This document shows, piece after piece, positions 3,071-47,362 of a stretch of DNA of 64,000 nt (positions are counted from its first letter, which is position 1; the number at the start of each line of letters is the position of its first letter). Below the pieces are notes generated by a model. That model was not told the DNA's origin. It was given only the letters and a program-made list of their open reading frames with translations, and ran no database searches. Source of the DNA: Octopus bimaculoides (lineage: Eukaryota); contig NC_068990.1 in the NCBI RefSeq assembly GCF_001194135.2, positions 44,942,379-45,006,378 on the forward strand, given 5' to 3'. Both the position numbers and the translations under genes were made by a program.

Positions 3071-5937
3071 TTGCTCGTTGAGTACTTCATATAGACTGCA
3101 TTATGAATAAACATTGTTTGGGTTTTTCGACTAAAAATATCCCCATACCTTCAAGGTACATATATATGTACCACCGAGTTTATCAACAGGCTAAGATGGC
3201 ATGCCTTCTTTGATTTGAAAAATAACAGAAAGGATAGTAATAATAGGAATGGAATTAAATCTTAAGGTGGGAAAAACAACTATAACGTCAAAACTTATAG
3301 AAATCCACCATCCAACCCAGTTCTTGTGAATTTTGAAAATGAGCTTATGAGTATGATTTAACGGCTGAAGTTTTCCAGATACACAAATCCTTTCCACAAA
3401 CTCCTGTCTGAGAAAGTCTCTACAATGAAATCATCTCCAGATTTGCACATCCTATCTGATAAGACCAGGAATATTTATTCTGTACCGCCGAGTTTTTATA
3501 ATGACTTGATCCTGAAAGAGCTTAATTCTGGATATAAACATGCAAGCAAAACTGCTTTGGATGAGATTAATGACACTCATCTAGATATCATCTCTAGTTT
3601 GGGCCTACTTGATAGAACTCAACCTTATGCTCCAAAAACTCCCCATTGTCTCTTGAAGGACCATAAGTCTGATTTTTTATCAAATCCTTCAATTAGATTA
3701 ATCTGCCCAACCAAGTCTGATTTGGGCAGAATTAGTAAATATATTATACATCAGATTATTCCCGTTGTGAGGGATAAGGTTCAGCTACCCCTATGAAACT
3801 TTACTGTGGACGTTATCTTATGATTTGACTCCTTTACTGATAAGCCAAATTTAGACTTTATCCAATTTGATATCTCAAATTATTACAATTCCATATCCCC
3901 TGTATTGCTAAATAAGGCTTTGATTTTCGCTCAGAAATTTGCGAATATCTCTAGTTTGGATGTTGATGTAATTTTAGCAGCAAGGGAGACTCTCATCTCC
4001 TACAACGAGCGTAATTGGCAGAGGGCTGCAGAATCTCTAACGTGTCCACAAGTAAAGAGATTTTTGATCAACATGCACCAGTATACAACAACGCTCTAAA
4101 ATCAAGTGGCTTCAAAACTAAAATCTCATATATACCTAACGCGAAATTTAAGAACAAAATGGCTGGTCTACCGCCTGACCATGTCACGGAAAGTCGAGAG
4201 AAATGTAATGCATTTTTTATTGCAACCAATATAAGCCATCAGTTACATATGTATATAAAGATGTTAGGAATAGATACTGGAAGCAAAATAGTGGCAGTGA
4301 GGAGATGAGTAAGACCAAGAGCTCACATTCTAGAATAAGGGAAGTCATATGGTTTGCACCCACTTTTTCTCTTAGGATAAGAAATTTGCCCAAATTGTTT
4401 TTTAAGATTCTGAAGGAGAACTTCCCTAAGAATCATAAATACTACAGCATCTGTAAATAAATCCTCCATCAAATTTTCTTACTCAATAATGCCAAATTTG
4501 GCCTCCATTATTGCTTCTATTAATAGAAACAAATTAAATGGGCGAGTCCACTGGAAGTATTCCTCTGTTGGTAACCCTGGTATTGGGCATGTAAGTTCTA
4601 ATAAGCCTAAGGTTAGTATTACAAACCATTTACTTCCACTGGCCTTATCAACCCCCCGTAATGAGATATCTGAAAAAAAGAATGTGGGAAGCCAGATAAG
4701 TAATGTTAGTATTAGTAATAGGGATATGGGTGGTTCTGGTAAATCTTGTAACTGTAGAAACCCTACATTATGTCCCCTTAACGGATTCTGTCTGACTACT
4801 AATGCCATATATAAATGCGTTGTTAAAGAGGAGGGTAATTTGGATAGGTTTTACATAGGCAGTACTGTCAATTTTAAGGCTAGGTATAGAGCCCACATGA
4901 ATTCGTTTTTGAATTTAAAATATTGTAACTACACTACACTTGCCTCTTATATACATGGTTCAAAGAGGAATAAAAAGAGTTATTCTCTTGAAAGGTCTGT
5001 TATCTCGAGGGCCCCTTATTTTAGAGTTAATAACAAGTGTAAGTTGTGTGTAAGGGGCCTAAAACATTACATAAATTTACAGAGGTGATCCCTTTTTACA
5101 ACCATAAGTTTTCTTCTATTTTTCTGAACATATATAGAAGTAAAATTAGATGTGGTAAAAAATATTTAGTTTTACAGGGTTTTGAAACTGGATAGTTAAA
5201 ATTCCTATTATTAGCAGTCACTTGCACGTTTAGCAATGAGATATTTTTTTTTTCTTTTGTTAGAAAATTTCGACTGGTCTTGTGATGGATTATTATCTTT
5301 AAGTTAGTTAGCCATGCGGCGTTGTAACTCCCGTGAACGAATAATTTGAGATTCCTGTTCATCCTGATGAGGGGGTCATTGCCGAGATGCACCTTAACTC
5401 GTAATCGAACCACGGCAATGAACTCCTGAAATGGCCATAGATGTGTTTGACTTGATTTTGTGGAACTCTTTTACACTCCTGGACTCCAACCTACCATGGT
5501 TTTTATGAAATGAACTTTTTTGACATATATTTTTTTGTTTGAGGGGAGTAAGAAAAATCTTTTTAGTCAATTGATACTTTATTTTATTTAGATTTTTAGT
5601 TGCATGACACGCTTTAGAATTTTTAGTCAACCATATATACCTTCTTAAAAGGCTGTTTTATATATCTGTATTTTTATTTGCATATATATTTTTTATCTTC
5701 CATATTTTTTATATATATGTATTCTTTATATGTTGAAAGGCCATGGTAATATTTATATATGATCAAATGTTTGGAGGCATGGTGTTATGTATGAAGTTGT
5801 TGACTCGAATTTGAGGTTTGTTCTCTGATCAATGTTTTTTCATCCCTGTCTCAATTACATTTGAGCACTTCTTTTTTGCAGTCTTATAAACTCTTTTGTC
5901 ACCATAAAAAGAGGCAAAAATTACCTCGTCATATATG

Positions 5938-7892: not shown

Positions 7893-9717
7893 CTAGCTAA
7901 AGATAAACCCCTATACTTAGCTTTTGTGGACTTGGAGAAAGTCTTTGACAAGGTCCCCCAATCCCTTATCTGGTGGGCAATGCGGAAACTGGAGATTGAT
8001 GAATGGTTAATAAGGGCTATACAGAGAGGCTGTTAGTAAGGTTAGGATTGGCAATGAGTATAGTGAAGAATTCCAGGTAGAAGTAGTCCTCCGGGCAATA
8101 ACAGAGGAATTCAAGACGGGTTGATCCTGAGAGCTCCTCTACGCTGATGACCTGGCCCTCATAGCAGAATCACTACCGGAACTAGAAAAGAAATTCCGGG
8201 TGTGGAAGTAAGGCTTAGAATCAAAAGGCCTTAGAGTCAATGTAGCAAAGACCAAAGTTCTAATAAGTAGGAAGGCGAACTCATCACACACCCCCTCAGG
8301 TAGGTGGCCCTGCTCGATCTGTAGAAAAGGTGTAAGTAGAAACTCTATAAGATGTATCCAGTGTAAGCTATGGACACAAGAGGTGCAGCAACATCAAAGG
8401 ATTAACCGAGAAGATAGCTTTCGTGTGCAGCAGATGCACAGGGGCAATANNNNNNNNNNNNNNNNNNNNNNNNNNNNNNNNNNNNNNNNNNNNNNNNNNN
8501 NNNNNNNNNNNNNNNNNNNNNNNNNNNNNNNNNNNNNNNNNNNNNNNNNNNNNNNNNNNNNNNNNNNNNNNNNNNNNNNNNNNNNNNNNNNNNNNNNNNN
8601 NNNNNNNNNNNNNNNNNNNNNNNNNNNNNNNNNNNNNNNNNNNNNNNNNNNNNNNNNNNNNNNNNNNNNNNNNNNNNNNNNNNNNNNNNNNNNNNNNNNN
8701 NNNNNNNNNNNNNNNNNNNNNNNNNNNNNNNNNNNNNNNNNNNNNNNNNNNNNNNNNNNNNNNNNNNNNNNNNNNNNNNNNNNCAGAGTGAAAGGTAGAT
8801 TGTATGATGCATGTGTGCAAACTGCCATGCTTCACAGCAGTGAAACATGGGCCGTGACTGCGGAGGACATGCATAGGCTCGAAAGAAATGGAGCTAGCAT
8901 GATCCACTGGATATGTAATGTCAGTGTGCACACACGACAGAGTGTAAGCGCCCTGAGAGAAATGCTTGACATAAGAAGCATTGGATGTGGCGTGCAAGAG
9001 AGACGTATGCGCTGGTACGGTCATGTACTACGGATGGGTGAGGAAAGATGTCTGAAGAAGTGCCATTCCCAAACAGTTGAAGGAATCCGGTATAGAGGTA
9101 GACCCAGGAAAACATAGGATGAGGTTGTGAAACACGCCCTTAGAACATTGGGCCTCACAGAGGCAATGACGAAAGACCAAGAGCTCTGGAGATAAGCTGT
9201 GACCGTGAAGACTCGATAAATAAAGTGAGTTCATGGCTGTATCCTACACCAATTTTGCATAACCAGCCCCAGCCCATTCAAAAGTACCTTGGATCGTAGG
9301 ACGACCTGCTGTGCTTACCTTGGATCATAGGGCAACCTGCTGTGCTTGAGGAGACCTATTGAGTCAAGTACATCAACATCAAAATAAAAATCAAATGGAA
9401 ATTGTAGTTGTGATACCTGTGCTGGTGGAATGTAAAAAGCACCATCCGAACATGGCCGATGCCAGCGCTGCCTTGACTGGCTTCCGTGCCGGTGGCACGT
9501 AAAATGTACCAACTGATCGTGGCCGTTGCCAGCCTTCTCTAGTCACTGTGCCAGTGGCACGTAAAAAGCACCCACTACACTCACGGAGTGGTTGGTGTTA
9601 GGAAGAGCATCCGGCTGTAGAAACACTGCCAGATCAGACTGGAGCCTGGTGGAGCCTGGTGCAGCCATCCAACCCATACTAGCATGGAAAACGGACGTTA
9701 AACAGTGATGATGATGT
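7893..9717 (+). mobile_element. RTE-clade LINE, 3' portion: RT, Cys/His finger, C-terminus, long 3' UTR and (GAT)n tail
   Basis: [68 protein letters not shown], with stops, frameshifts and an N-gap; continuous into the UTR shared with the many short copies. Confidence 0.92.
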
Positions 9718-41000: not shown

Positions 41001-43379
41001 TTTGATACCAACCTACCTAATGCTGCTTTTGGTTCTGTGATCAAATTTCCTATTGTAAAGTTTTCTACATTAAAACTTTCATTAAAATTTCAGGTTACTT
41101 TAGGTTTCAAATACAAGCATAATTAATAATTACAGCTATTTTATTAAACTCCTCGTTATTTTTTAAATTAATTGAAACAAAGGCAGTGTTTTTCAACAGA
41201 AATATGGTAACAAAACTGGCACTTTGTTGGTTACAACAACAGGCATTACAGTCAATCCGATCAATGGAACAGCCTACTTGTGAAATTAACGACCAAGTGG
41301 TCGAGCCCTCCACAGACACATGTATCCTTAACATAGTTACTACTCATTTTTGCCAGCTGAGTGGAATGGAGCAACATGAAATAAAGTATCTTGCTCAAGG
41401 ACACAACATGCCGCCAGGAATCAAATTCATGACTTTACAATTGTGAGCTGAATTACCCCGAACACTAAGCCATGTTCCTTCACAATCATCATCATCATCG
41501 TTTAACGTCCGTTTTCCATGCTGGCATGGGTTAGATGGTTTGACTGAGGTCTGGAGATCCAGCAGCTGCACCAGGCTCCAATCTGATCTGGCAATGTTTC
41601 TACAGCTGGATGCCCTTCCTAACACCAATCACTCCGGGAATGTAGTGGGTGCTTTTTACGTGCCACCAGCACGGGGGCCAGTCAGGGGATACTAGCATCG
41701 GCCACGTTCGGATGGTGCATTTTACATGCCACCGGCATGAGAGCCAGTCAAGAGGTACTGGCATTGGCATCAAAAGGGTTAACAGAGGTAGCTGAAGAAA
41801 ATAACAATATGGTAACAAAAAGGCTGATGTCTATAGAACCTCTTGTGAATTCCTCTTCATAATCCTGATACTCAAATATGTTATTGTTACTTACACTGCA
41901 TCTGTTTTCAGTCATCTGAGAACAACCTGATCCATCATTACGGACACAACAAGCTGATTTGCGCTCAAGGTCTCGATCTTTTTCCAAAGCATCCAATATG
42001 TTCTTATCTTTTCGCATACAGGGAGAATATTTGGCACCCAAGTGAATGAGATCAGCCTAAGGAAAATACAAAAATAACTGTTAGAGGTAAACAAAATATT
42101 AGACTTTGATAGAATAACAGGGCCGTACAGTGTGGTTTAATAGTTGCTTCTCTGTTTCTGATCAGAAAGTACTGTTGTGGAGATAACAGATTCTTATTAA
42201 CAATCCATTCTCATATATGAATATCTATTAGAATTATTGTCTACAAAGAGTGATACTGAGTGTTATCATAGACACTGGCCNNNNNNNNNNNNNNNNNNNN
42301 NNNNNNNNNNNNNNNNNNNNNNNNNNNNNNNNNNNNNNNNNNNNNNNNNNNNNNNNNNNNNNNNNNNNNNNNNNNNNNNNNNNNNNGACAGGTGCTTATA
42401 TTTACCTATTAAAAAAAGTTCAAGTCTAAATCTTCAGCCTATGGATCCATTAAAATTTATCAGAATTTATCCCACTTTCTTTGGTATTTAAGGCAACTGA
42501 ACATACAAGACTCCTTCAAGAATGTGTCAGTGTGTTGAAGAATTAACCTCCTTCTCCAGTTGCCACAAGTATATGTGTTCAACTGAGTAAACAAGCATTG
42601 TGAGAGTAAGCGCTTTGCTCAAGGACACAACACTCCACTCAGTACAAGAATCAAACGAGCTACCTACTTCCTCCCTCCACTCACAACTGCTTGCCTTCCT
42701 CTTCACCCATTTTACCTTTAAATTTCCCTGCATTATGATTTGAAATGTTAGATTTTGATTTCTCCACCCTGAAGACAAAGGCTGGATCTACTCAATGTTT
42801 ATATGCTTCCATTATTGATTGCATATTATTGTAAAATAAATCTGCCACATTACAAAGTAGCTACAACCCCCAGAAACAGTTATCGGACCTGTCCCACCAT
42901 ACCTTCTCCCCTTTAATTTTCTGTCTTTGCACTGAGTAAGTTTGTTCTATTAATATATAAATGCCTATATACTTATACTTGAATATTCATTATCTGAAAA
43001 TTTTTCCATTTTTGCTTTCTCTCTATTCACATGTATAAACATATATATATTTTGTATATCTAACCCAAGCAGTTATATTTGTTTATGTGATTATATATGT
43101 ATATAGTTACCTATGTAGATATGTTGGCGAGCTGGCAGAATAGTTAGCACGACAGGCGAAATGCTTAGTGGTATTTCGTCTGCCATTACATTCTGAGTTC
43201 AAATTCCGCCAAGGTCGACTTTGCCTTTCATCCCTTTCGGGGTCGATAAATTAAGTACCAGTTATACACTGGTGTCGATGTAATCATCTTTATCCCTTTG
43301 TCTGTCCTTGTTTGTCCCCTCTATGTTTAGCCCCTTGCGGGCAATAAGGAAATAAGATATGCTATAAATGTATGTGTAT

Positions 43380-43413
<34 letters not shown>

Positions 43414-46400
43414 ACATATGTTAATATACATTATACCTATTAGTTATTGTGTTTATTATATATACCAACATCTCAATGTTAAACAGTTTTTGTTTACATG
43501 AGGCATGACAAGTGGGGAGTCAAGGTGAACAGTCATCTCCAGATGTAGGTGTAAAGGGATGCAATATTTCCTTTTGCTTATCATGCTGTCTAATTAAAAT
43601 AGGGGCATCAAAACTCTTGACCATCAAGCAGAGAACCCTTCACTATATCACTGATAAATACAGAATGTTTTTTTTTATAAATTAACACTAAATAATGTTC
43701 TCATTTAAAGCTATACATCTGAAGTAGACAATAGACAGTTGACTGAATAAACCCCAAAGCATGACAGGTATTATAAAAGACAAGAAGCAAAGATAAGAAG
43801 CCTTGTAATATGTGAACTCAGAGCAGCAGATTTATGAACAAGAGTTTAGTCTAATAAGATATAGTTTTTGCTAAATACTGTTTACTAATTAATATTAATT
43901 ATTGCAACAGTTGTTAATATTTCTAAAATCATTAATATGGTGAGCTGGAAGAAAAATTAACATCCCAGGCAAAATGCTTATCAGCATTTCATCTGTCTTT
44001 ATGTTCAAAGTCCAAATTCTGTCAAGGTCAACTTTACTTTCATCCTTTCAGGGTCTAGTGACTCCTGGCAGTCAAGCAGGAAAGCAAAACGAAAAAGGGA
44101 TCTAACAAGAGTAATCTCCCTCGACCTTCTCGAAAATTCTTGGATATTCTAGAAGCTTTCAATTAACTTCCAGATGATGTGGAAGTCAGGGATTTCTGGT
44201 TCATCCCTTATATAAAGCAAACACAATTCTAATTTCGCACTCCTTTTGCCTGTCAGTTCCTAGGGATGCACATTGAGCCACGCCACTCACACACACACCC
44301 GCACGTGCACATATTCACTTCATTCGCTTTGAGACGTGGTTCCAAAGTATGGTCAGGTAATATGTTACAAGCCTTTTCTTTCAAACCATTCTTATATGTT
44401 AACGTATTGCATCCAGTAATAAATATGTTATGACTTATTTTGAACAACTCACAAGTTCTTATTTTTCTTGTCATTTTACATACAAGATGGTGATCCCTCT
44501 TTTTCGCATGCAATTGTAAAATTGTAGGTTGTCACATACTGACAAGGGGTTGGTAAAAGAAGTACCAGTTGAGCGTTGGGGGTCAATACAATCAGCTTGC
44601 CCATCTTCTTGAAACAGCTGACCTTGTACCAAAATTTGATGCCAATATTTCTAACATCATTCAACTTTTGTTGCACTTCAGTTTCATTGCATTTGAATAT
44701 CATGAAACCATATATGACATTTATATCTGGCATATTAAATACTTAAATAACTACTTAAACATACACAACTGGATTCATTTTCCCTGATTATTGAGGAATG
44801 GGAAAGAAAATCAATGCCACAAGGCATCAAACAGGATATTGTCAGCCACTAGTAGAGATCAGTGCCCCCATCACCACTGTTTATCCTCTAATACTGATCA
44901 CTGTTGATCAACCATAATGGTCGTTCTCCTATTGTGGATTCTGTTCCCCCACAACTGACTTCCTTCTACTGTAGATCATTGCTCTTCCACTGCTATCTAT
45001 CCACTACTGTGGATCTTATCACCTCCATCACTACTACAATCCTCTACTATGGATCATTGCTGTTCTACTGTTGCCTAGGCCCCTAGTTTGGCTATCTGCT
45101 CTAGGTCATTGTCTAACTTGTTCTTTCAACACATTTTTCTTAACCCTTTTCATAACAACCCACCTGAGACTGCCTCTGGTTCTATGATACAGTTTTCTTG
45201 TTTAAGATTATCTAAATTAAAACCATCCATACAAAATTTTATGTTAATTTAAGTCCAGAACACCAGCTTAATAATGACAAAGTTGTATTTTTAAATTCAT
45301 CATTATTTTCAAAATTAATTGAAACAAAATCAGTGTATATCAACAGACTGTTGGCTGCGTCTCATGTTTCCGAGCTTGCAATCCAGTTCATTTTCTTGGG
45401 TTTTTGAACCACAGATGGCTCCGCAATCCAAGGGTTGCATGAAATATACGGGGACATTGTAGACAAGGTATAGAAGGGGTTGGTTTGGGAAGGAGAAGGT
45501 GCTGCTTTCTCTCCCGTCTCTTGAGTTCAGCTCTTGCTACTCGGGCTTTCTTGAAGTCTGCTGAACCCGTTTTGATGGTGTGTCTCCAGAGAGGTCTGTT
45601 TGCCGAGATATCCTCCCAGTGAACGGGGTCAATGTTGGTGCTTTTCAAGGCTGATTTGAGTTGGTCCTTGTACCGCCTCAAGGGGCTCCACGAGGACGTT
45701 TTCCTTCAGACAGTTCACCGTAGAGACAGATCTTGGGAAGGCGGTGTTCATTCATCCGACAGGCGTGACCTGACCATCGGAGACGATGTTCAATGATCAA
45801 GGCTTCGACAGAAATATGACAATAAAATATCAACAGCAATATGATAATAAAAGGGTTAAACAACAATACATTGATAATACTTTGTATGTTACCTGACTAG
45901 GACCAAACCACATATTAGCAACATCTCGATATTCCTTATATTCAATTGCCAGGCTTGGCATCAGAACCTGAAGTAATAACAAAAGAAAAAAAGCTACAAA
46001 TGAATATTTACAACTTTTAGTTTAACAAAGATACATAACAATGTTTCCATCAATAAAAATTAAACAACTTTTTTTCTATTTCAAGTAAAATACTCATCAA
46101 TATAAAATGTAGATCAAATTAATTAGTCAAAAACTTTCTAGACAGATTACAAAGAGGTGCTGAAAAGTTCCTGGCTTTGGGTAAAAGGAAATACAGGAGG
46201 ATCAGTTAATTATGATTATATTGAACATATTCCCCTCTCAGATTCACACAGTTATTGCAGCAGTTCTTCAGTTTTCCTAAACTGTGCAAAAGAACTTGGA
46301 AGATTGGGCCTCCAACCAGGCCTTTCACAATACCCTTAAAGTCAGGAACTTTTCAGCGTCCCCTCGTACATCAAAAACAACAGCCAATGTATCAAATACT

Positions 46401-46714
46401 ACTCTCTGTAGTCCAGGGAAAGAATATTGTGAAATGTCTTTTTTTTCTGCCTTCAGTGCCAGAACACTTTATCACCATCATCAACACTTTTCTATTCTTG
46501 CATGAGTTGGACAGAATTTACTGACACAGATTTTATATGGATGGGTGACCTTCCCATTGCCAGTCCTTACATGTTTCAAAGGAAGGTAATATTTCTCTAT
46601 GGTCAGACATACTTTTGCAAAATAATAAATGACATTCATTTACAACAATCACGATATCTCGACAAGGAGACACAAACATACACACACTCTCATACACACA
46701 ACATGCATAAATAA

Positions 46715-46746
<32 letters not shown>

Positions 46747-47362
46747 NNNNNNNNNNNNNNNNNNNNNNNNNNNNNNNNNNNNNNNNNNNNNNNNNNNNNN
46801 NNNNNNNNNNNNNNNNNNNNNNNNNNNNNNNNNNNNNNNNNNNNNNNNNNNNNNNNNNNNNNNNNNNNNNNNNNNNNNNNNNNNNNNNNNNNNNNNNNNN
46901 NNNNNNNNNNNNNNNNNNNNNNNNNNNNNNNNNNNNNNNNNNNNNNNNNNNNNNNNNNNNNNNNNNNNNNNNNNNNNNNNNNNNNNNNNNNNNNNNNNNN
47001 NNNNNNNNNNNNNNNNNNNNNNNNNNNNNNNNNNNNNNNNNNNNNNNNNNNNNNNNNNNNNNNNNNNNNNNNNNNNNNNNNNNNNNNNNNNNNNNNNNNN
47101 NNNNNNNNNNNNNNNNNNNNNNNNNNNNNNNNNNNNNNNNNNNNNNNNNNNNNNNNNNNNNNNNNNNNNNNNNNNNNNNNNNNNNNNNNNNNNNNNNNNN
47201 NNNNNNNNNNNNNNNNNNNNNNNNNNNNNNNNNNNNNNNNNNNNNNNNNNNNNNNNNNNNNNNNNNNNNNNNNNNNNNNNNNNNNNNNNNNNNNNNNNNN
47301 NNNNNNNNNNNNNNNNNNNNNNNNNNNNNNNNNNNNNNNNNNNNNNNNNNNNNNNNNNNNNN

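What the first reader, a model, noticed from the sequence alone, without database searches (positions are those of the whole stretch)
44059..44780. Heat-shock promoter cassette inserted antisense inside an iRhom intron (possible heat-inducible LTR)
A SINE (43938-44055) is cut off mid-core and followed by a CpG-retaining block found nowhere else in the window. On the plus strand it carries seven contiguous alternating nGAAn units (five perfect, two with one mismatch; 44126-44160), TATATAAAG at 44209, an Inr-like GCACTCC about 30 nt later (44237-44243), a strong donor CAG|GTAATA (44357), AATAAA (44418) and acceptors at 44486 and 44527. HSE array plus TATA is the canonical HSF-driven promoter layout. 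Reading 1: a TG...CA LTR (44059-44484) followed by TGGTGATCCC (44488), a weak match to a tRNA-Trp primer-binding site (TGGTGACCCC). That would be a heat-responsive LTR retrotransposon end, analogous to plant ONSEN. Reading 2: a small spliced transcript (ATG 44349, MVR|[27 protein letters not shown]). Either would give stress-induced antisense transcription across iRhom exon 45893-45967.
Basis: partly seen in the sequence, partly recalled or inferred. Interest (0 to 1): 0.75.

Follow-up and report, generated by a model that had tools for sequence, protein, structure and literature searches.

The report
Heat-shock-motif solo LTR in iRhom intron
The block is one copy of a roughly 490-base mobile element, most likely a solitary LTR, that landed inside a SINE in an iRhom intron and carries a textbook heat-shock-factor binding array in front of a TATA box; the motif is ancestral to the repeat family, but nobody has shown that heat switches it on.

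Summary
The seven-unit nGAAn array matches 19 of 21 core bases, against 15 for the next best site in the window and 17 for the best of 60 shuffles.

The block is not a host promoter. It is a 492-nt insertion (44054-44545) that splits one SINE, whose second half resumes at 44546, and it is flanked by AGGG/GGGG. DNA reads show tens to about a hundred diverged copies elsewhere in the genome. These end in TGTAGTGA...TCACTACA and have unrelated flanks on both sides, so the best reading is a solo LTR.

Other copies keep the array, and some carry seven perfect units, so the array is ancestral to the family.

The proposed LTR end (44484) and primer-binding site (44488) lie inside the element. No internal gag-pol region or second LTR was seen.

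The donor at 44356/44357 is used in one RNA run. It joins to 46457, a repeat-derived exon, not to 44486 or 44527. This gives a non-coding plus-strand RNA whose intron crosses iRhom exon 45892-45967 antisense. The RNA is rare, and that contig starts 107 nt upstream of the predicted start site. Three deep RNA runs show nothing from this copy.

Heat induction is untested. This is a new member of a known kind, of moderate interest.

The parts
43938..44053 (+). First half of a SINE copy, interrupted by the insertion
   Evidence: Aligns with three other SINE copies in the window up to ...CCTTTCAGGG. DNA read depth is in the thousands.
44050..44053 (.). Left copy of the putative 4-bp target-site duplication (AGGG; the SINE consensus here is GGGG)
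   Evidence: In alignment A1 both SINE halves cover the same GGGG columns. Sequence read.
44054..44545 (+). Inserted repeat unit (492 nt), best read as a solo LTR. It starts TcTAGTGA (family: TGTAGTGA) and ends ...CTGACAA. It lacks the family's terminal TCACTAC.
   Evidence: Joint 44055->44554 appears in dozens of reads from SINE copies that lack the block. Read depth is 10-75 against 0-2 in unique flanks. Other copies give the termini TG|TAGTGA and TCACTACA, followed by unrelated flanks.
44126..44160 (+). Heat-shock element array: seven contiguous inverted nGAAn units, five perfect, 19 of 21 core bases
   Evidence: Among other copies, the only core positions that vary in 20% or more of reads are 44143 G>A and 44159 T>C, and both changes restore perfect units.
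44156..44166 (+). 11-nt stretch absent from a minority of family copies. Without it the array ends in a perfect cTTCc (44167-44171).
   Evidence: 'Left out 11' at 44156. Loose-end string CTTCTAGAAAGTTCTTGAACATTCTAGAAG lies before 44167.
44209..44217 (+). TATA box TATATAAAG
   Evidence: It lies in the 44175-44218 block, which is strongly conserved among copies.
44237..44243 (+). Initiator-like GCACTCC, the predicted transcription start (A44239, 30 nt after the TATA box)
   Evidence: Sequence only. One low-depth contig in run X41 starts at 44238. The spliced contig in X20 starts upstream, at 44131.
44238..44356 (+). Exon 1 of the plus-strand spliced RNA. The 5' end is not mapped. The 3' end is the donor CAG|GTAATA.
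   Evidence: The 249-nt X20 contig covers 44131-44356 and then 23 nt equal to 46457-46479.
44357..46456 (+). Intron of the plus-strand RNA (GT...AG, 2100 nt). It spans the iRhom exon in antisense.
44418..44423 (+). AATAAA, the candidate polyadenylation signal at the R/U5 border of the LTR
   Evidence: Sequence only. No read evidence of use.
44488..44497 (+). It lies inside the element.
   Evidence: Other copies align colinearly across 44336-44543. The SINE resumes at 44546.
44546..44549 (.). Right copy of the putative target-site duplication (GGGG)
44546..44677 (+). Second half of the interrupted SINE. The far end is approximate and taken from read depth.
   Evidence: Alignment A1. Depth is 50-690 up to 44677 and 0-2 beyond it.
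45892..45967 (-). Exon on the minus strand (the iRhom strand) that the plus-strand RNA's intron crosses
   Evidence: A 565-nt RNA contig in X1 matches only 45892-45967 and then leaves the genome sequence. The gene is identified as iRhom.
46457..46585 (+). Exon 2 of the plus-strand RNA, derived from a repeat. The acceptor ttttttttctgccttcag| is shown by reads. The 3' boundary at AAG|GTAATA is only predicted.
   Evidence: 46430-46640 matches seven repeat copies in the window. 46485-46519 is shared with other repeat contigs.

Best explanation
The block is one copy (44054-44545, plus strand) of a repeat family of about 490-500 nt with tens to about a hundred diverged copies in this genome. It inserted into a SINE inside an intron of an iRhom gene, antisense to that gene, and duplicated four bases of the target (GGGG).

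Its anatomy fits a solitary long terminal repeat of an LTR retrotransposon:
- 8-nt inverted termini TGTAGTGA...TCACTACA;
- a U3 part with an array of seven inverted nGAAn units 48 nt upstream of a TATA box;
- a predicted start about 30 nt after the TATA box;
- AATAAA about 180 nt further on;
- a short U5 part.

The heat-shock array was already present in the family's ancestor. In this copy two of its seven units have decayed by one base each.

Inferred mechanism: under proteotoxic stress, HSF trimers bind the array and fire the TATA-directed promoter. In a complete element this would yield genomic RNA. In this solo copy it would yield a plus-strand RNA that uses a copy-specific donor (44356/44357), splices 2.1 kb downstream into a repeat-derived exon (46457), and runs antisense through iRhom exon 45892-45967 as primary transcript.

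- **Shown:** the insertion, its multi-copy nature, the termini, the ancestry of the array, and the existence of the spliced plus-strand RNA.
- **Inferred:** LTR identity, the start site, HSF binding, heat induction, and any effect on iRhom.

The confidence of 0.6 is for the structural claim, a solo LTR-type transposon copy carrying an ancestral HSE-TATA promoter module. Heat inducibility in vivo is rated separately at about 0.25-0.3.
For: **Insertion.** Many DNA reads from other SINE copies join 44055 directly to 44554. Alignment with three SINE copies in the window shows the two halves abutting at GGGG, which is present on both sides.

**Multi-copy.** At 80% likeness or more, raw-read depth summed over both read orientations is about 45-75 at 44066-44137, 30-45 at 44138-44215 and 10-15 at 44450-44540. 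Unique flanks give 0-2. Contig word-depths in X6 give the same ratios, about 2200-2800 against about 30.

**Termini.**
- Other copies read ...TG before TAGTGA (15 contigs with otherwise random upstream flank, agreement 0.45).
- Further 5' strings are GTTGTAGTGAACC..., GGGTTGTAGGGAAC and AAGGATGTAGTGACC.
- At the 3' end they read TCACTACA followed by unrelated sequence in three runs.

**HSE.**
- 19 of 21 core bases match, beyond all shuffles.
- Within the array, every position that varies in 20% or more of reads is either a free 'n' position or restores a perfect unit.
- Subfamily strings carry six or seven perfect units.

**Promoter layout.** TATA spacing and the initiator-like motif. An X41 contig starts at 44238.

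**RNA.** An X20 contig joins 44356 to 46457 across GT...AG.

**Youth or low methylation.** CpG observed/expected is 0.61, against about 0.3 around it.
Against: - No second copy, internal gag-pol, primer-binding site or polypurine tract was found. The window has no other copy. The sequences next to other copies' ends are unrelated to each other. LTR status therefore rests on termini, target duplication and signal layout alone.
- This copy has TC rather than TG at its 5' end and lacks the last seven bases of the family's 3' terminus, so the target duplication rests on one imperfect pair (AGGG/GGGG).
- The only spliced contig begins at 44131, 107 nt upstream of the predicted start. X20 has no intronic coverage that could explain this as pre-mRNA. 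That RNA may not start at the TATA-directed site.
- The copy is silent in three deep RNA runs.
- RNA from paralogous copies reads straight through the TATA and start region, which indicates read-through rather than LTR-initiated transcripts.
- About half of the copies that keep the 5' part lose alignment within the array. Some carry a 30-nt palindrome there.
- Core positions do not vary significantly less than free positions (2 of 21 against 4 of 14). Selection on the array is therefore not shown, only ancestry.
Confidence: 0.6

Rival explanations
1. The family is a short non-autonomous element of another class that carries a captured or self-evolved heat-shock promoter. Candidates are a MITE-like DNA transposon with 8-nt terminal inverted repeats, or a fragment spread by a Helitron-type element. 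It was never an LTR.
For: Every copy that could be sampled has unrelated flanks on both sides, and no conserved interior follows TCACTACA. The unit has true terminal inverted repeats. Helitrons are known to spread HSEs in Caenorhabditis (PMC6927752, found).
Against: The TG...CA termini are constant across copies, so they belong to the element. A 4-bp target duplication together with a TATA-then-AATAAA order in a unit of about 500 nt is the LTR pattern. Helitron hallmarks are absent: no 5'-TC...CTRR-3' ends, no insertion between A and T without duplication. Eight-nt inverted repeats are short for a MITE.
Confidence: 0.2
2. It is the genuine promoter and 5' exon of a host heat-shock-inducible gene nested antisense in the iRhom intron.
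For: The HSE-TATA-start layout is canonical. A spliced plus-strand RNA exists. The block retains CpG.
Against: The block sits inside a SINE with a target duplication and is present in tens of copies. No plus-strand ORF of 90 codons or more lies between 44.5 and 52 kb. Exon 2 is repeat-derived and the spliced RNA has ORFs of 52 codons or fewer. The G at 44356 that gives the CAG|GT donor context is specific to this copy; other copies have T there.
Confidence: 0.04
3. The HSE-like array is incidental sequence of a dead repeat. It does not bind HSF in chromatin, and the rare RNA is transcriptional noise or part of a longer antisense transcript that starts upstream.
For: The X20 contig starts upstream of the TATA box. 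The copy is silent in three deep RNA runs, and paralogs are only read through. No statistical sign of selection on core bases. Two units have decayed in this copy.
Against: An array this good is not expected by chance. It is ancestral across subfamilies, with up to seven perfect units. From established knowledge of HSF, three contiguous inverted units suffice for trimer binding, and this copy has two separate runs of three perfect contiguous units (units 1-3 and 5-6 plus the near-perfect unit 7). Silence without stress is what an inducible promoter would show.
Confidence: 0.3

Closest known systems
[quoted passage not shown]
   Same: A repeat unit with LTR-like ends carries heat-shock-factor motifs upstream of its own core promoter, so the host stress response would drive the element. 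Solo copies could confer heat-responsive transcription on neighbouring sequence.
   Different: This is an animal genome. The target duplication is 4 bp, where copia-type elements make 5 bp. No internal region is known. The array is longer and more regular (seven contiguous units). Heat activation is not shown here.
HSE-bearing Helitrons of Caenorhabditis (PMC6927752; also PMC6765114)
   Same: An animal transposon family disperses canonical HSEs through the genome and can create heat-inducible non-coding transcripts and new HSF targets.
   Different: Different transposon class. Here the termini are TG...CA with a target duplication, not Helitron ends. Here the HSEs sit with a TATA box and a poly(A) signal in a compact promoter-like unit.
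Canonical hsp gene promoters (for example hsp70: proximal HSE array plus TATA box)
   Same: Contiguous inverted nGAAn units lie about 50 nt upstream of a TATA box, with a start about 30 nt after it.
   Different: No chaperone ORF follows. The unit is mobile, multi-copy, and bounded by inverted termini inside a SINE.
LTR-initiated or LTR-exonised long non-coding RNAs
   Same: A solo LTR contributes the first exon and splice donor of a spliced non-coding RNA that picks up a repeat-derived second exon.
   Different: Initiation inside the LTR is not proven here, because the contig extends upstream of the TATA box.

Membership tests
LTR of an LTR retrotransposon (solo LTR) | Termini 5'-TG...CA-3' forming a short inverted repeat | tested here: met
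   The family termini TGTAGTGA...TCACTACA were recovered from other copies' reads and contigs. This copy is degenerate: TcTAGTGA at 44054, with the 3' terminal TCACTAC missing.
LTR of an LTR retrotransposon (solo LTR) | Target-site duplication of 4-6 bp | tested here: met
   AGGG (44050-44053) and GGGG (44546-44549) occupy the same GGGG columns of the SINE alignment. This is a single copy with one mismatch.
LTR of an LTR retrotransposon (solo LTR) | U3-R-U5 order of signals: enhancer and TATA box, start, poly(A) signal | tested here: met
   HSE 44126-44160, TATA 44209, initiator-like motif 44237, AATAAA 44418. These are motifs only, and their use is not shown.
LTR of an LTR retrotransposon (solo LTR) | Occurs as paired direct repeats around an interior with a primer-binding site, polypurine tract and gag-pol | tested here: inconclusive
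   No second copy in the window. The sequence after TCACTACA and before TGTAGTGA in other copies shows no consensus. The whole genome could not be searched.
HSF-dependent heat-shock promoter | At least three contiguous inverted nGAAn units | tested here: met
   Seven units, five perfect, 19 of 21 core bases. The shuffle maximum is 17.
HSF-dependent heat-shock promoter | Array placed shortly upstream of a core promoter | tested here: met
   48 nt between the array and the TATA box, and 30 nt from the TATA box to A44239.
HSF-dependent heat-shock promoter | HSF binding and heat-induced transcription from the predicted start | not testable with these tools
   Run conditions are coded, and no stress-labelled run could be selected. 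In unlabelled runs the copy is silent or rare.
ONSEN/copia-type heat-activated retrotransposon | Ty1/copia element with a 5-bp target duplication and a copia-type interior | tested here: not met
   The duplication is 4 bp. No interior is known. The resemblance is functional, not membership.
Helitron carrying HSEs | 5'-TC...CTRR-3' ends, a 3' hairpin, and insertion between A and T without duplication | tested here: not met
   The family ends are TG...CA. The insertion lies in GGGG with a duplication.
Host heat-shock protein gene | Chaperone ORF downstream of the promoter, at a single-copy locus | tested here: not met
   No plus-strand ORF of 90 codons or more between 44.5 and 52 kb. The spliced RNA has ORFs of 52 codons or fewer. 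The unit is multi-copy.
iRhom (inactive rhomboid) host gene, minus strand | Rhomboid-fold C-terminal domain plus an iRhom homology domain, with closest similarity to iRhom1/2 | tested here: met
   Joined minus-strand exon translations match iRhom2 (8snl) at E=2.9e-85 and iRhom1 at 1.6e-83. Pfam Rhomboid at 8e-14.

The most novel reading that the evidence does not exclude
A family of LTR-type elements in an invertebrate animal carries an ancestral seven-unit HSE array and so hijacks the HSF response, as ONSEN does in plants. This would scatter heat-inducible promoters through the genome. This solo copy would then drive a heat-inducible antisense non-coding RNA across an iRhom exon and could modulate iRhom expression or splicing under stress.
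Probability: 0.25. Interest if true: 0.65.

Novelty: new member of a known kind. Interest (0 to 1): 0.4.

Why it matters
Transposons that carry stress-factor binding sites are one route by which stress-responsive regulation spreads through a genome. Well-worked cases are ONSEN in plants and Helitrons in nematodes.

An LTR-type family with a canonical HSF array and its own TATA box in another animal lineage would be a further, independent case. It would also be a ready-made natural reporter of the heat-shock response in that animal.

For this locus the practical consequence is narrower: a possible stress-dependent antisense RNA over one iRhom exon. None of this is established without heat-shock expression data. 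As it stands the finding is a well-characterised transposon insertion with a suggestive motif.

Tried and rejected
1. **Nested heat-shock gene.** I looked for a plus-strand chaperone ORF downstream and found none. Exon 2 turned out to be repeat-derived.
2. **Following the spliced RNA beyond 46479.** The contigs break in the repeat, and an assembly gap begins at 46747. The 3' part of the transcript is unknown.
No read or contig uses them.
Rejected, because other copies align through to 44543 and the SINE resumes at 44546.
5. **Structured RNA or ribozyme in the block, as in Penelope-type repeats.** Rfam at E of 1 or less over 42000-47000 gave only a microsatellite-type mir-297 hit far below threshold.
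6. **Identifying the organism and fetching an orthologous empty site through the iRhom protein.** The best database hit is only 64% identical, and the organism's own proteins are not in the collection. I dropped this route. For the same reason I ran no further search on ORFs inside the element.
7. **Test for selection on the array.** Core against free positions varying at 20% or more is 2 of 21 against 4 of 14, which is not significant. Only ancestry can be claimed.
8. **Literature.** No paper was found that describes an HSE-bearing LTR in molluscs or cephalopods.
9. **Taxon.** From memory, the SINE-rich, AT-rich sequence resembles a cephalopod genome. This was not verified.
Full report
**1.

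- The array 44126-44160 is cTTCt cGAAa aTTCt tGGAt aTTCt aGAAg cTTTc, with five perfect nGAAn/nTTCn units and two with one mismatch.
- TATATAAAG is at 44209-44217, 48 nt after the array.
- GCACTCC is at 44237-44243, with A44239 30 nt after the first T of the TATA box.
- CAG|GTAATA is at 44356/44357.
- AATAAA is at 44418-44423.
- AG dinucleotides end at 44486 and 44527.
- TGGTGATCCC is at 44488-44497.

A scan of the whole window for seven-unit arrays gives 19 of 21 core matches here. The best independent site elsewhere gives 15. The maximum over 60 shuffles that keep local composition is 17.

The block has no other copy in the window. Its CpG observed/expected ratio is 0.61, against 0.26 for the window and 0.29-0.34 for the flanks.

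**2. The host gene**

Minus-strand exon translations between about 25 kb and 54 kb, joined together, match human iRhom2 (8snl, E=2.9e-85) and iRhom1. The last exon has a Pfam Rhomboid domain.

An RNA contig in run X1 matches exactly 45892-45967 and then leaves the genomic sequence, as an internal exon would.

The block therefore lies in an iRhom intron, and its promoter-like strand is antisense to iRhom. The organism could not be named. The nearest protein in the large collection is only 64% identical.

**3. What the block is: an insertion into a SINE**

I laid raw DNA reads from three runs, plus one run's contigs, at 80% likeness or more.
- 43938-44055 and 44554 to about 44677 have depths in the hundreds to thousands.
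- Many reads join 44055 directly to 44554. These come from other copies of one SINE that lack the block.
- Alignment with three SINE copies from the window shows the left half ending ...CCTTTCAGGG and the right half beginning GGGGTTGGTAAAAGAAGTACC.
- Both halves cover the same GGGG of the SINE consensus.

The SINE is therefore interrupted, not truncated. The insert is 44054-44545, flanked by AGGG and GGGG, which reads as a 4-bp target duplication with one mismatch.

**4. The insert is itself a repeat family**

Unique intron sequence to the right (44678-44900) has depth 0-2 per run. Inside the insert, depths summed over both read orientations are:

| Region | Depth |
|---|---|
| 44066-44137 | about 45-75 |
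| 44138-44215 | about 30-45 |
| central part | about 5-12 |
| 44400-44540 | about 10-28 |

Contig word-depths in X6 give the same ratios, about 2200-2800 against about 30. The copy number is therefore roughly 70-90 for the 5' part and 10-20 for the 3' part at this likeness. Most reads are 80-95% alike.

A 757-nt RNA contig in X20 holds a whole paralog. Its two ends match 44056-44217 and 44476-44502. Between them lie 241 unlike letters, where this copy has 258. The fall in depth across the centre therefore reflects divergence between subfamilies, not truncation.

**5. Ends of the family**

*5' end.*
- Fifteen X6 contigs have unrelated sequence before 44056 (agreement 0.45), but their consensus ends in ...TG.
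- Other contigs read GTTGTAGTGAACCCTGG..., GGGTTGTAGGGAAC and AAGGATGTAGTGACCC.

*3' end.* Reads from three runs continue after 44544 with TCACTACA and then diverge.

The family unit is therefore 5'-TGTAGTGA...TCACTACA-3', an 8-nt inverted repeat beginning TG and ending CA. This copy begins TcTAGTGA and has lost TCACTAC at its 3' end.

These termini, a 4-bp duplication, and the order enhancer-TATA-start-AATAAA in about 490 nt form the pattern of an LTR.

What is missing is the rest of a retrotransposon. There is no second copy or gag-pol in the window. No conserved sequence sits next to either terminus in other copies. I therefore call it a solo LTR with moderate confidence, not certainty. The nearby reverse-transcriptase tail at 45388-45866 lies on the minus strand and shows no connection to this element.

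**6.

*Reading 1.* It placed the LTR end at 44484 and a tRNA-Trp-like primer-binding site at 44488. Both lie inside the element. Other copies align colinearly to 44543, and the SINE resumes at 44546. There is no primer-binding site and no interior here.

*Reading 2.* It proposed splicing from 44357 to 44486 or 44527 and a 30-residue peptide.
- The donor is real. A 249-nt X20 contig covers 44131-44356 without a mismatch and continues with 23 nt that occur once in the window, at 46457-46479, behind ttttttttctgccttcag.
- The acceptor is therefore 2.1 kb downstream, and the proposed peptide, which reads into SINE sequence, does not exist.
- Exon 2 is repeat-derived.
- The spliced RNA has no ORF longer than 52 codons.
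- Other family copies have T at 44356 where this copy has G, so the CAG|GT donor context is peculiar to this copy.

The GT...AG orientation fixes the RNA to the plus strand. Its primary transcript therefore crosses iRhom exon 45892-45967 in antisense.

**7. Is the heat-shock array a property of the family?**

One search lists all positions in 44040-44245 where 20% or more of reads from other copies differ. Within the array these are:

| Position | Change | Kind of position |
|---|---|---|
| 44131 | C>A | free 'n' |
| 44136 | A>G | free 'n' |
| 44141 | T>C | free 'n' |
| 44145 | T>C | free 'n' |
| 44143 | G>A, about half of reads | core; turns tGGAt into a perfect GAA unit |
| 44159 | T>C, about 40% of reads | core; turns cTTTc into a perfect TTC unit |

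The other 19 core bases vary in fewer than 20% of reads.

Strings recovered from subfamilies:
- CTTCTAGAAAGTTCTTGAACATTCTAGAAG followed by cTTCc gives seven perfect units. These copies lack the 11 nt at 44156-44166.
- ...CAAACATTCTAGAAGCTTCC.
- ...TGTTCGAGAGCTTTCTGAAAGCTTCC.

The array is therefore ancestral to the family and was probably perfect.

Three cautions apply.
- Core positions do not vary significantly less than free positions (2 of 21 against 4 of 14).
- Depth halves across the array.
- Some copies carry a 30-nt palindrome (AGGTTCGTCCATCGATCGATGGACGAACCT) at 44127-44140. A good share of copies have therefore lost or disrupted the array.

**8. Is the promoter used?**

The evidence is thin and mixed.

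*In favour.* A low-depth X41 contig starts at 44238, one base before the predicted start. The plus-strand spliced RNA exists.

*Against, or neutral.*
- The spliced X20 contig begins at 44131, upstream of the TATA box. X20 has no coverage of the adjacent intron that could explain this as iRhom pre-mRNA.
- Only four of the RNA or unclassified runs listed hold any exon 1 words.
- Three deep RNA-seq runs, about 6% of each sampled, show zero depth on the copy-specific parts.
- RNA reads from paralogous copies run straight through the TATA and start region, as in read-through transcripts.

Silence without stress is what an inducible promoter would show, but it is also what a dead one would show. No run could be chosen by treatment, so heat induction is untested.

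**9. Mechanism and confidence**

- Transposon insertion into a SINE: about 0.95.
- LTR type: about 0.65.
- Array able to bind HSF as naked DNA: likely, from established knowledge that three contiguous inverted units suffice. This copy has three perfect units in a row, then one imperfect unit, then two perfect units and a near-perfect one.
- Heat-inducible transcription in vivo from this copy: about 0.25-0.3.
- An effect on iRhom: speculation.

**10. Comparison with known systems**

The closest functional analogues are ONSEN, whose LTR HSEs make a plant copia element heat-activated (PMC13602373, PMC8376061), and the Caenorhabditis Helitrons that disperse HSEs and heat-induced non-coding RNAs (PMC6927752, PMC6765114).

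The present element is a member of neither.
- A 4-bp rather than 5-bp duplication and an unknown interior exclude filing it with ONSEN/copia.
- TG...CA ends with a duplication exclude a Helitron.

It works like, or at least is built like, these systems. Full-text searches found no description of an HSE-bearing LTR in molluscs or cephalopods.

**11. Verdict**

It is a new member of a known kind and of moderate interest. The decisive data are a genome-wide census of the family and heat-shock transcript mapping.

Noticed in passing
other genomic copies of the family (reads laid at window 44106-44140 and 44439): A perfect 30-nt palindrome, AGGTTCGTCCATCGATCGATGGACGAACCT, follows positions 44106, 44127 or 44140 (and a related string follows 44439) in about 20 reads from other copies. 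It may be a small nested insertion or hairpin-forming element that repeatedly hit this family, and it disrupts the HSE array in those copies.
   Followed up: no
window 46457-46585: The second exon of the plus-strand RNA lies in a degenerate copy of a repeat that has at least seven other copies in the window, which makes it an exonised repeat. Its ATG-initiated reading frame (MSWTEF...) is unlikely to be a real protein.
   Followed up: partly
window 43364-43434: An Rfam mir-297 match (40.4 bits against a gathering score of 90) sits on a (TG)n microsatellite and is almost certainly an artefact of low complexity.
   Followed up: no
window 44059-44780 in run X19: A run labelled as a different organism (organism B) holds 30% of the block's 31-mers and 36% of exon 2's. 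The insertion, or a near-identical one, may therefore be shared with a close relative, which would date it.
   Followed up: no
window 45388-45866 (-): Two adjoining minus-strand ORFs ([12 protein letters not shown]... and ...RKRYKDQLK...) look, from memory, like the C-terminal tail of a non-LTR retrotransposon. Pfam found nothing, and they are unrelated to the HSE element.
   Followed up: partly
window 4489-5088 (+) and 52331-52867 (-): The ORF at 4489-5088 has a weak GIY-YIG match (19.7 bits, below the cut-off), as in Penelope-like elements. The ORF at 52331-52867 has an RVT_1 reverse-transcriptase match (37.8 bits), and a PHD/C1-like zinc finger lies next to it at 51780-52061.
   Followed up: partly
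window 46747-47362, 15132-15481, 1970-2340, 8450-8790, 57720-58300 (approximate): Runs of N (assembly gaps), several next to TA or CA microsatellites. The gap starting at 46747 blocks tracing of the plus-strand RNA downstream.
   Followed up: no
window 44175-44218: This 44-nt stretch, which includes the TATA box, is the best-conserved piece among family copies. Contigs and reads match it with one change (T44193C, the family majority) even where the flanks have diverged.
   Followed up: partly
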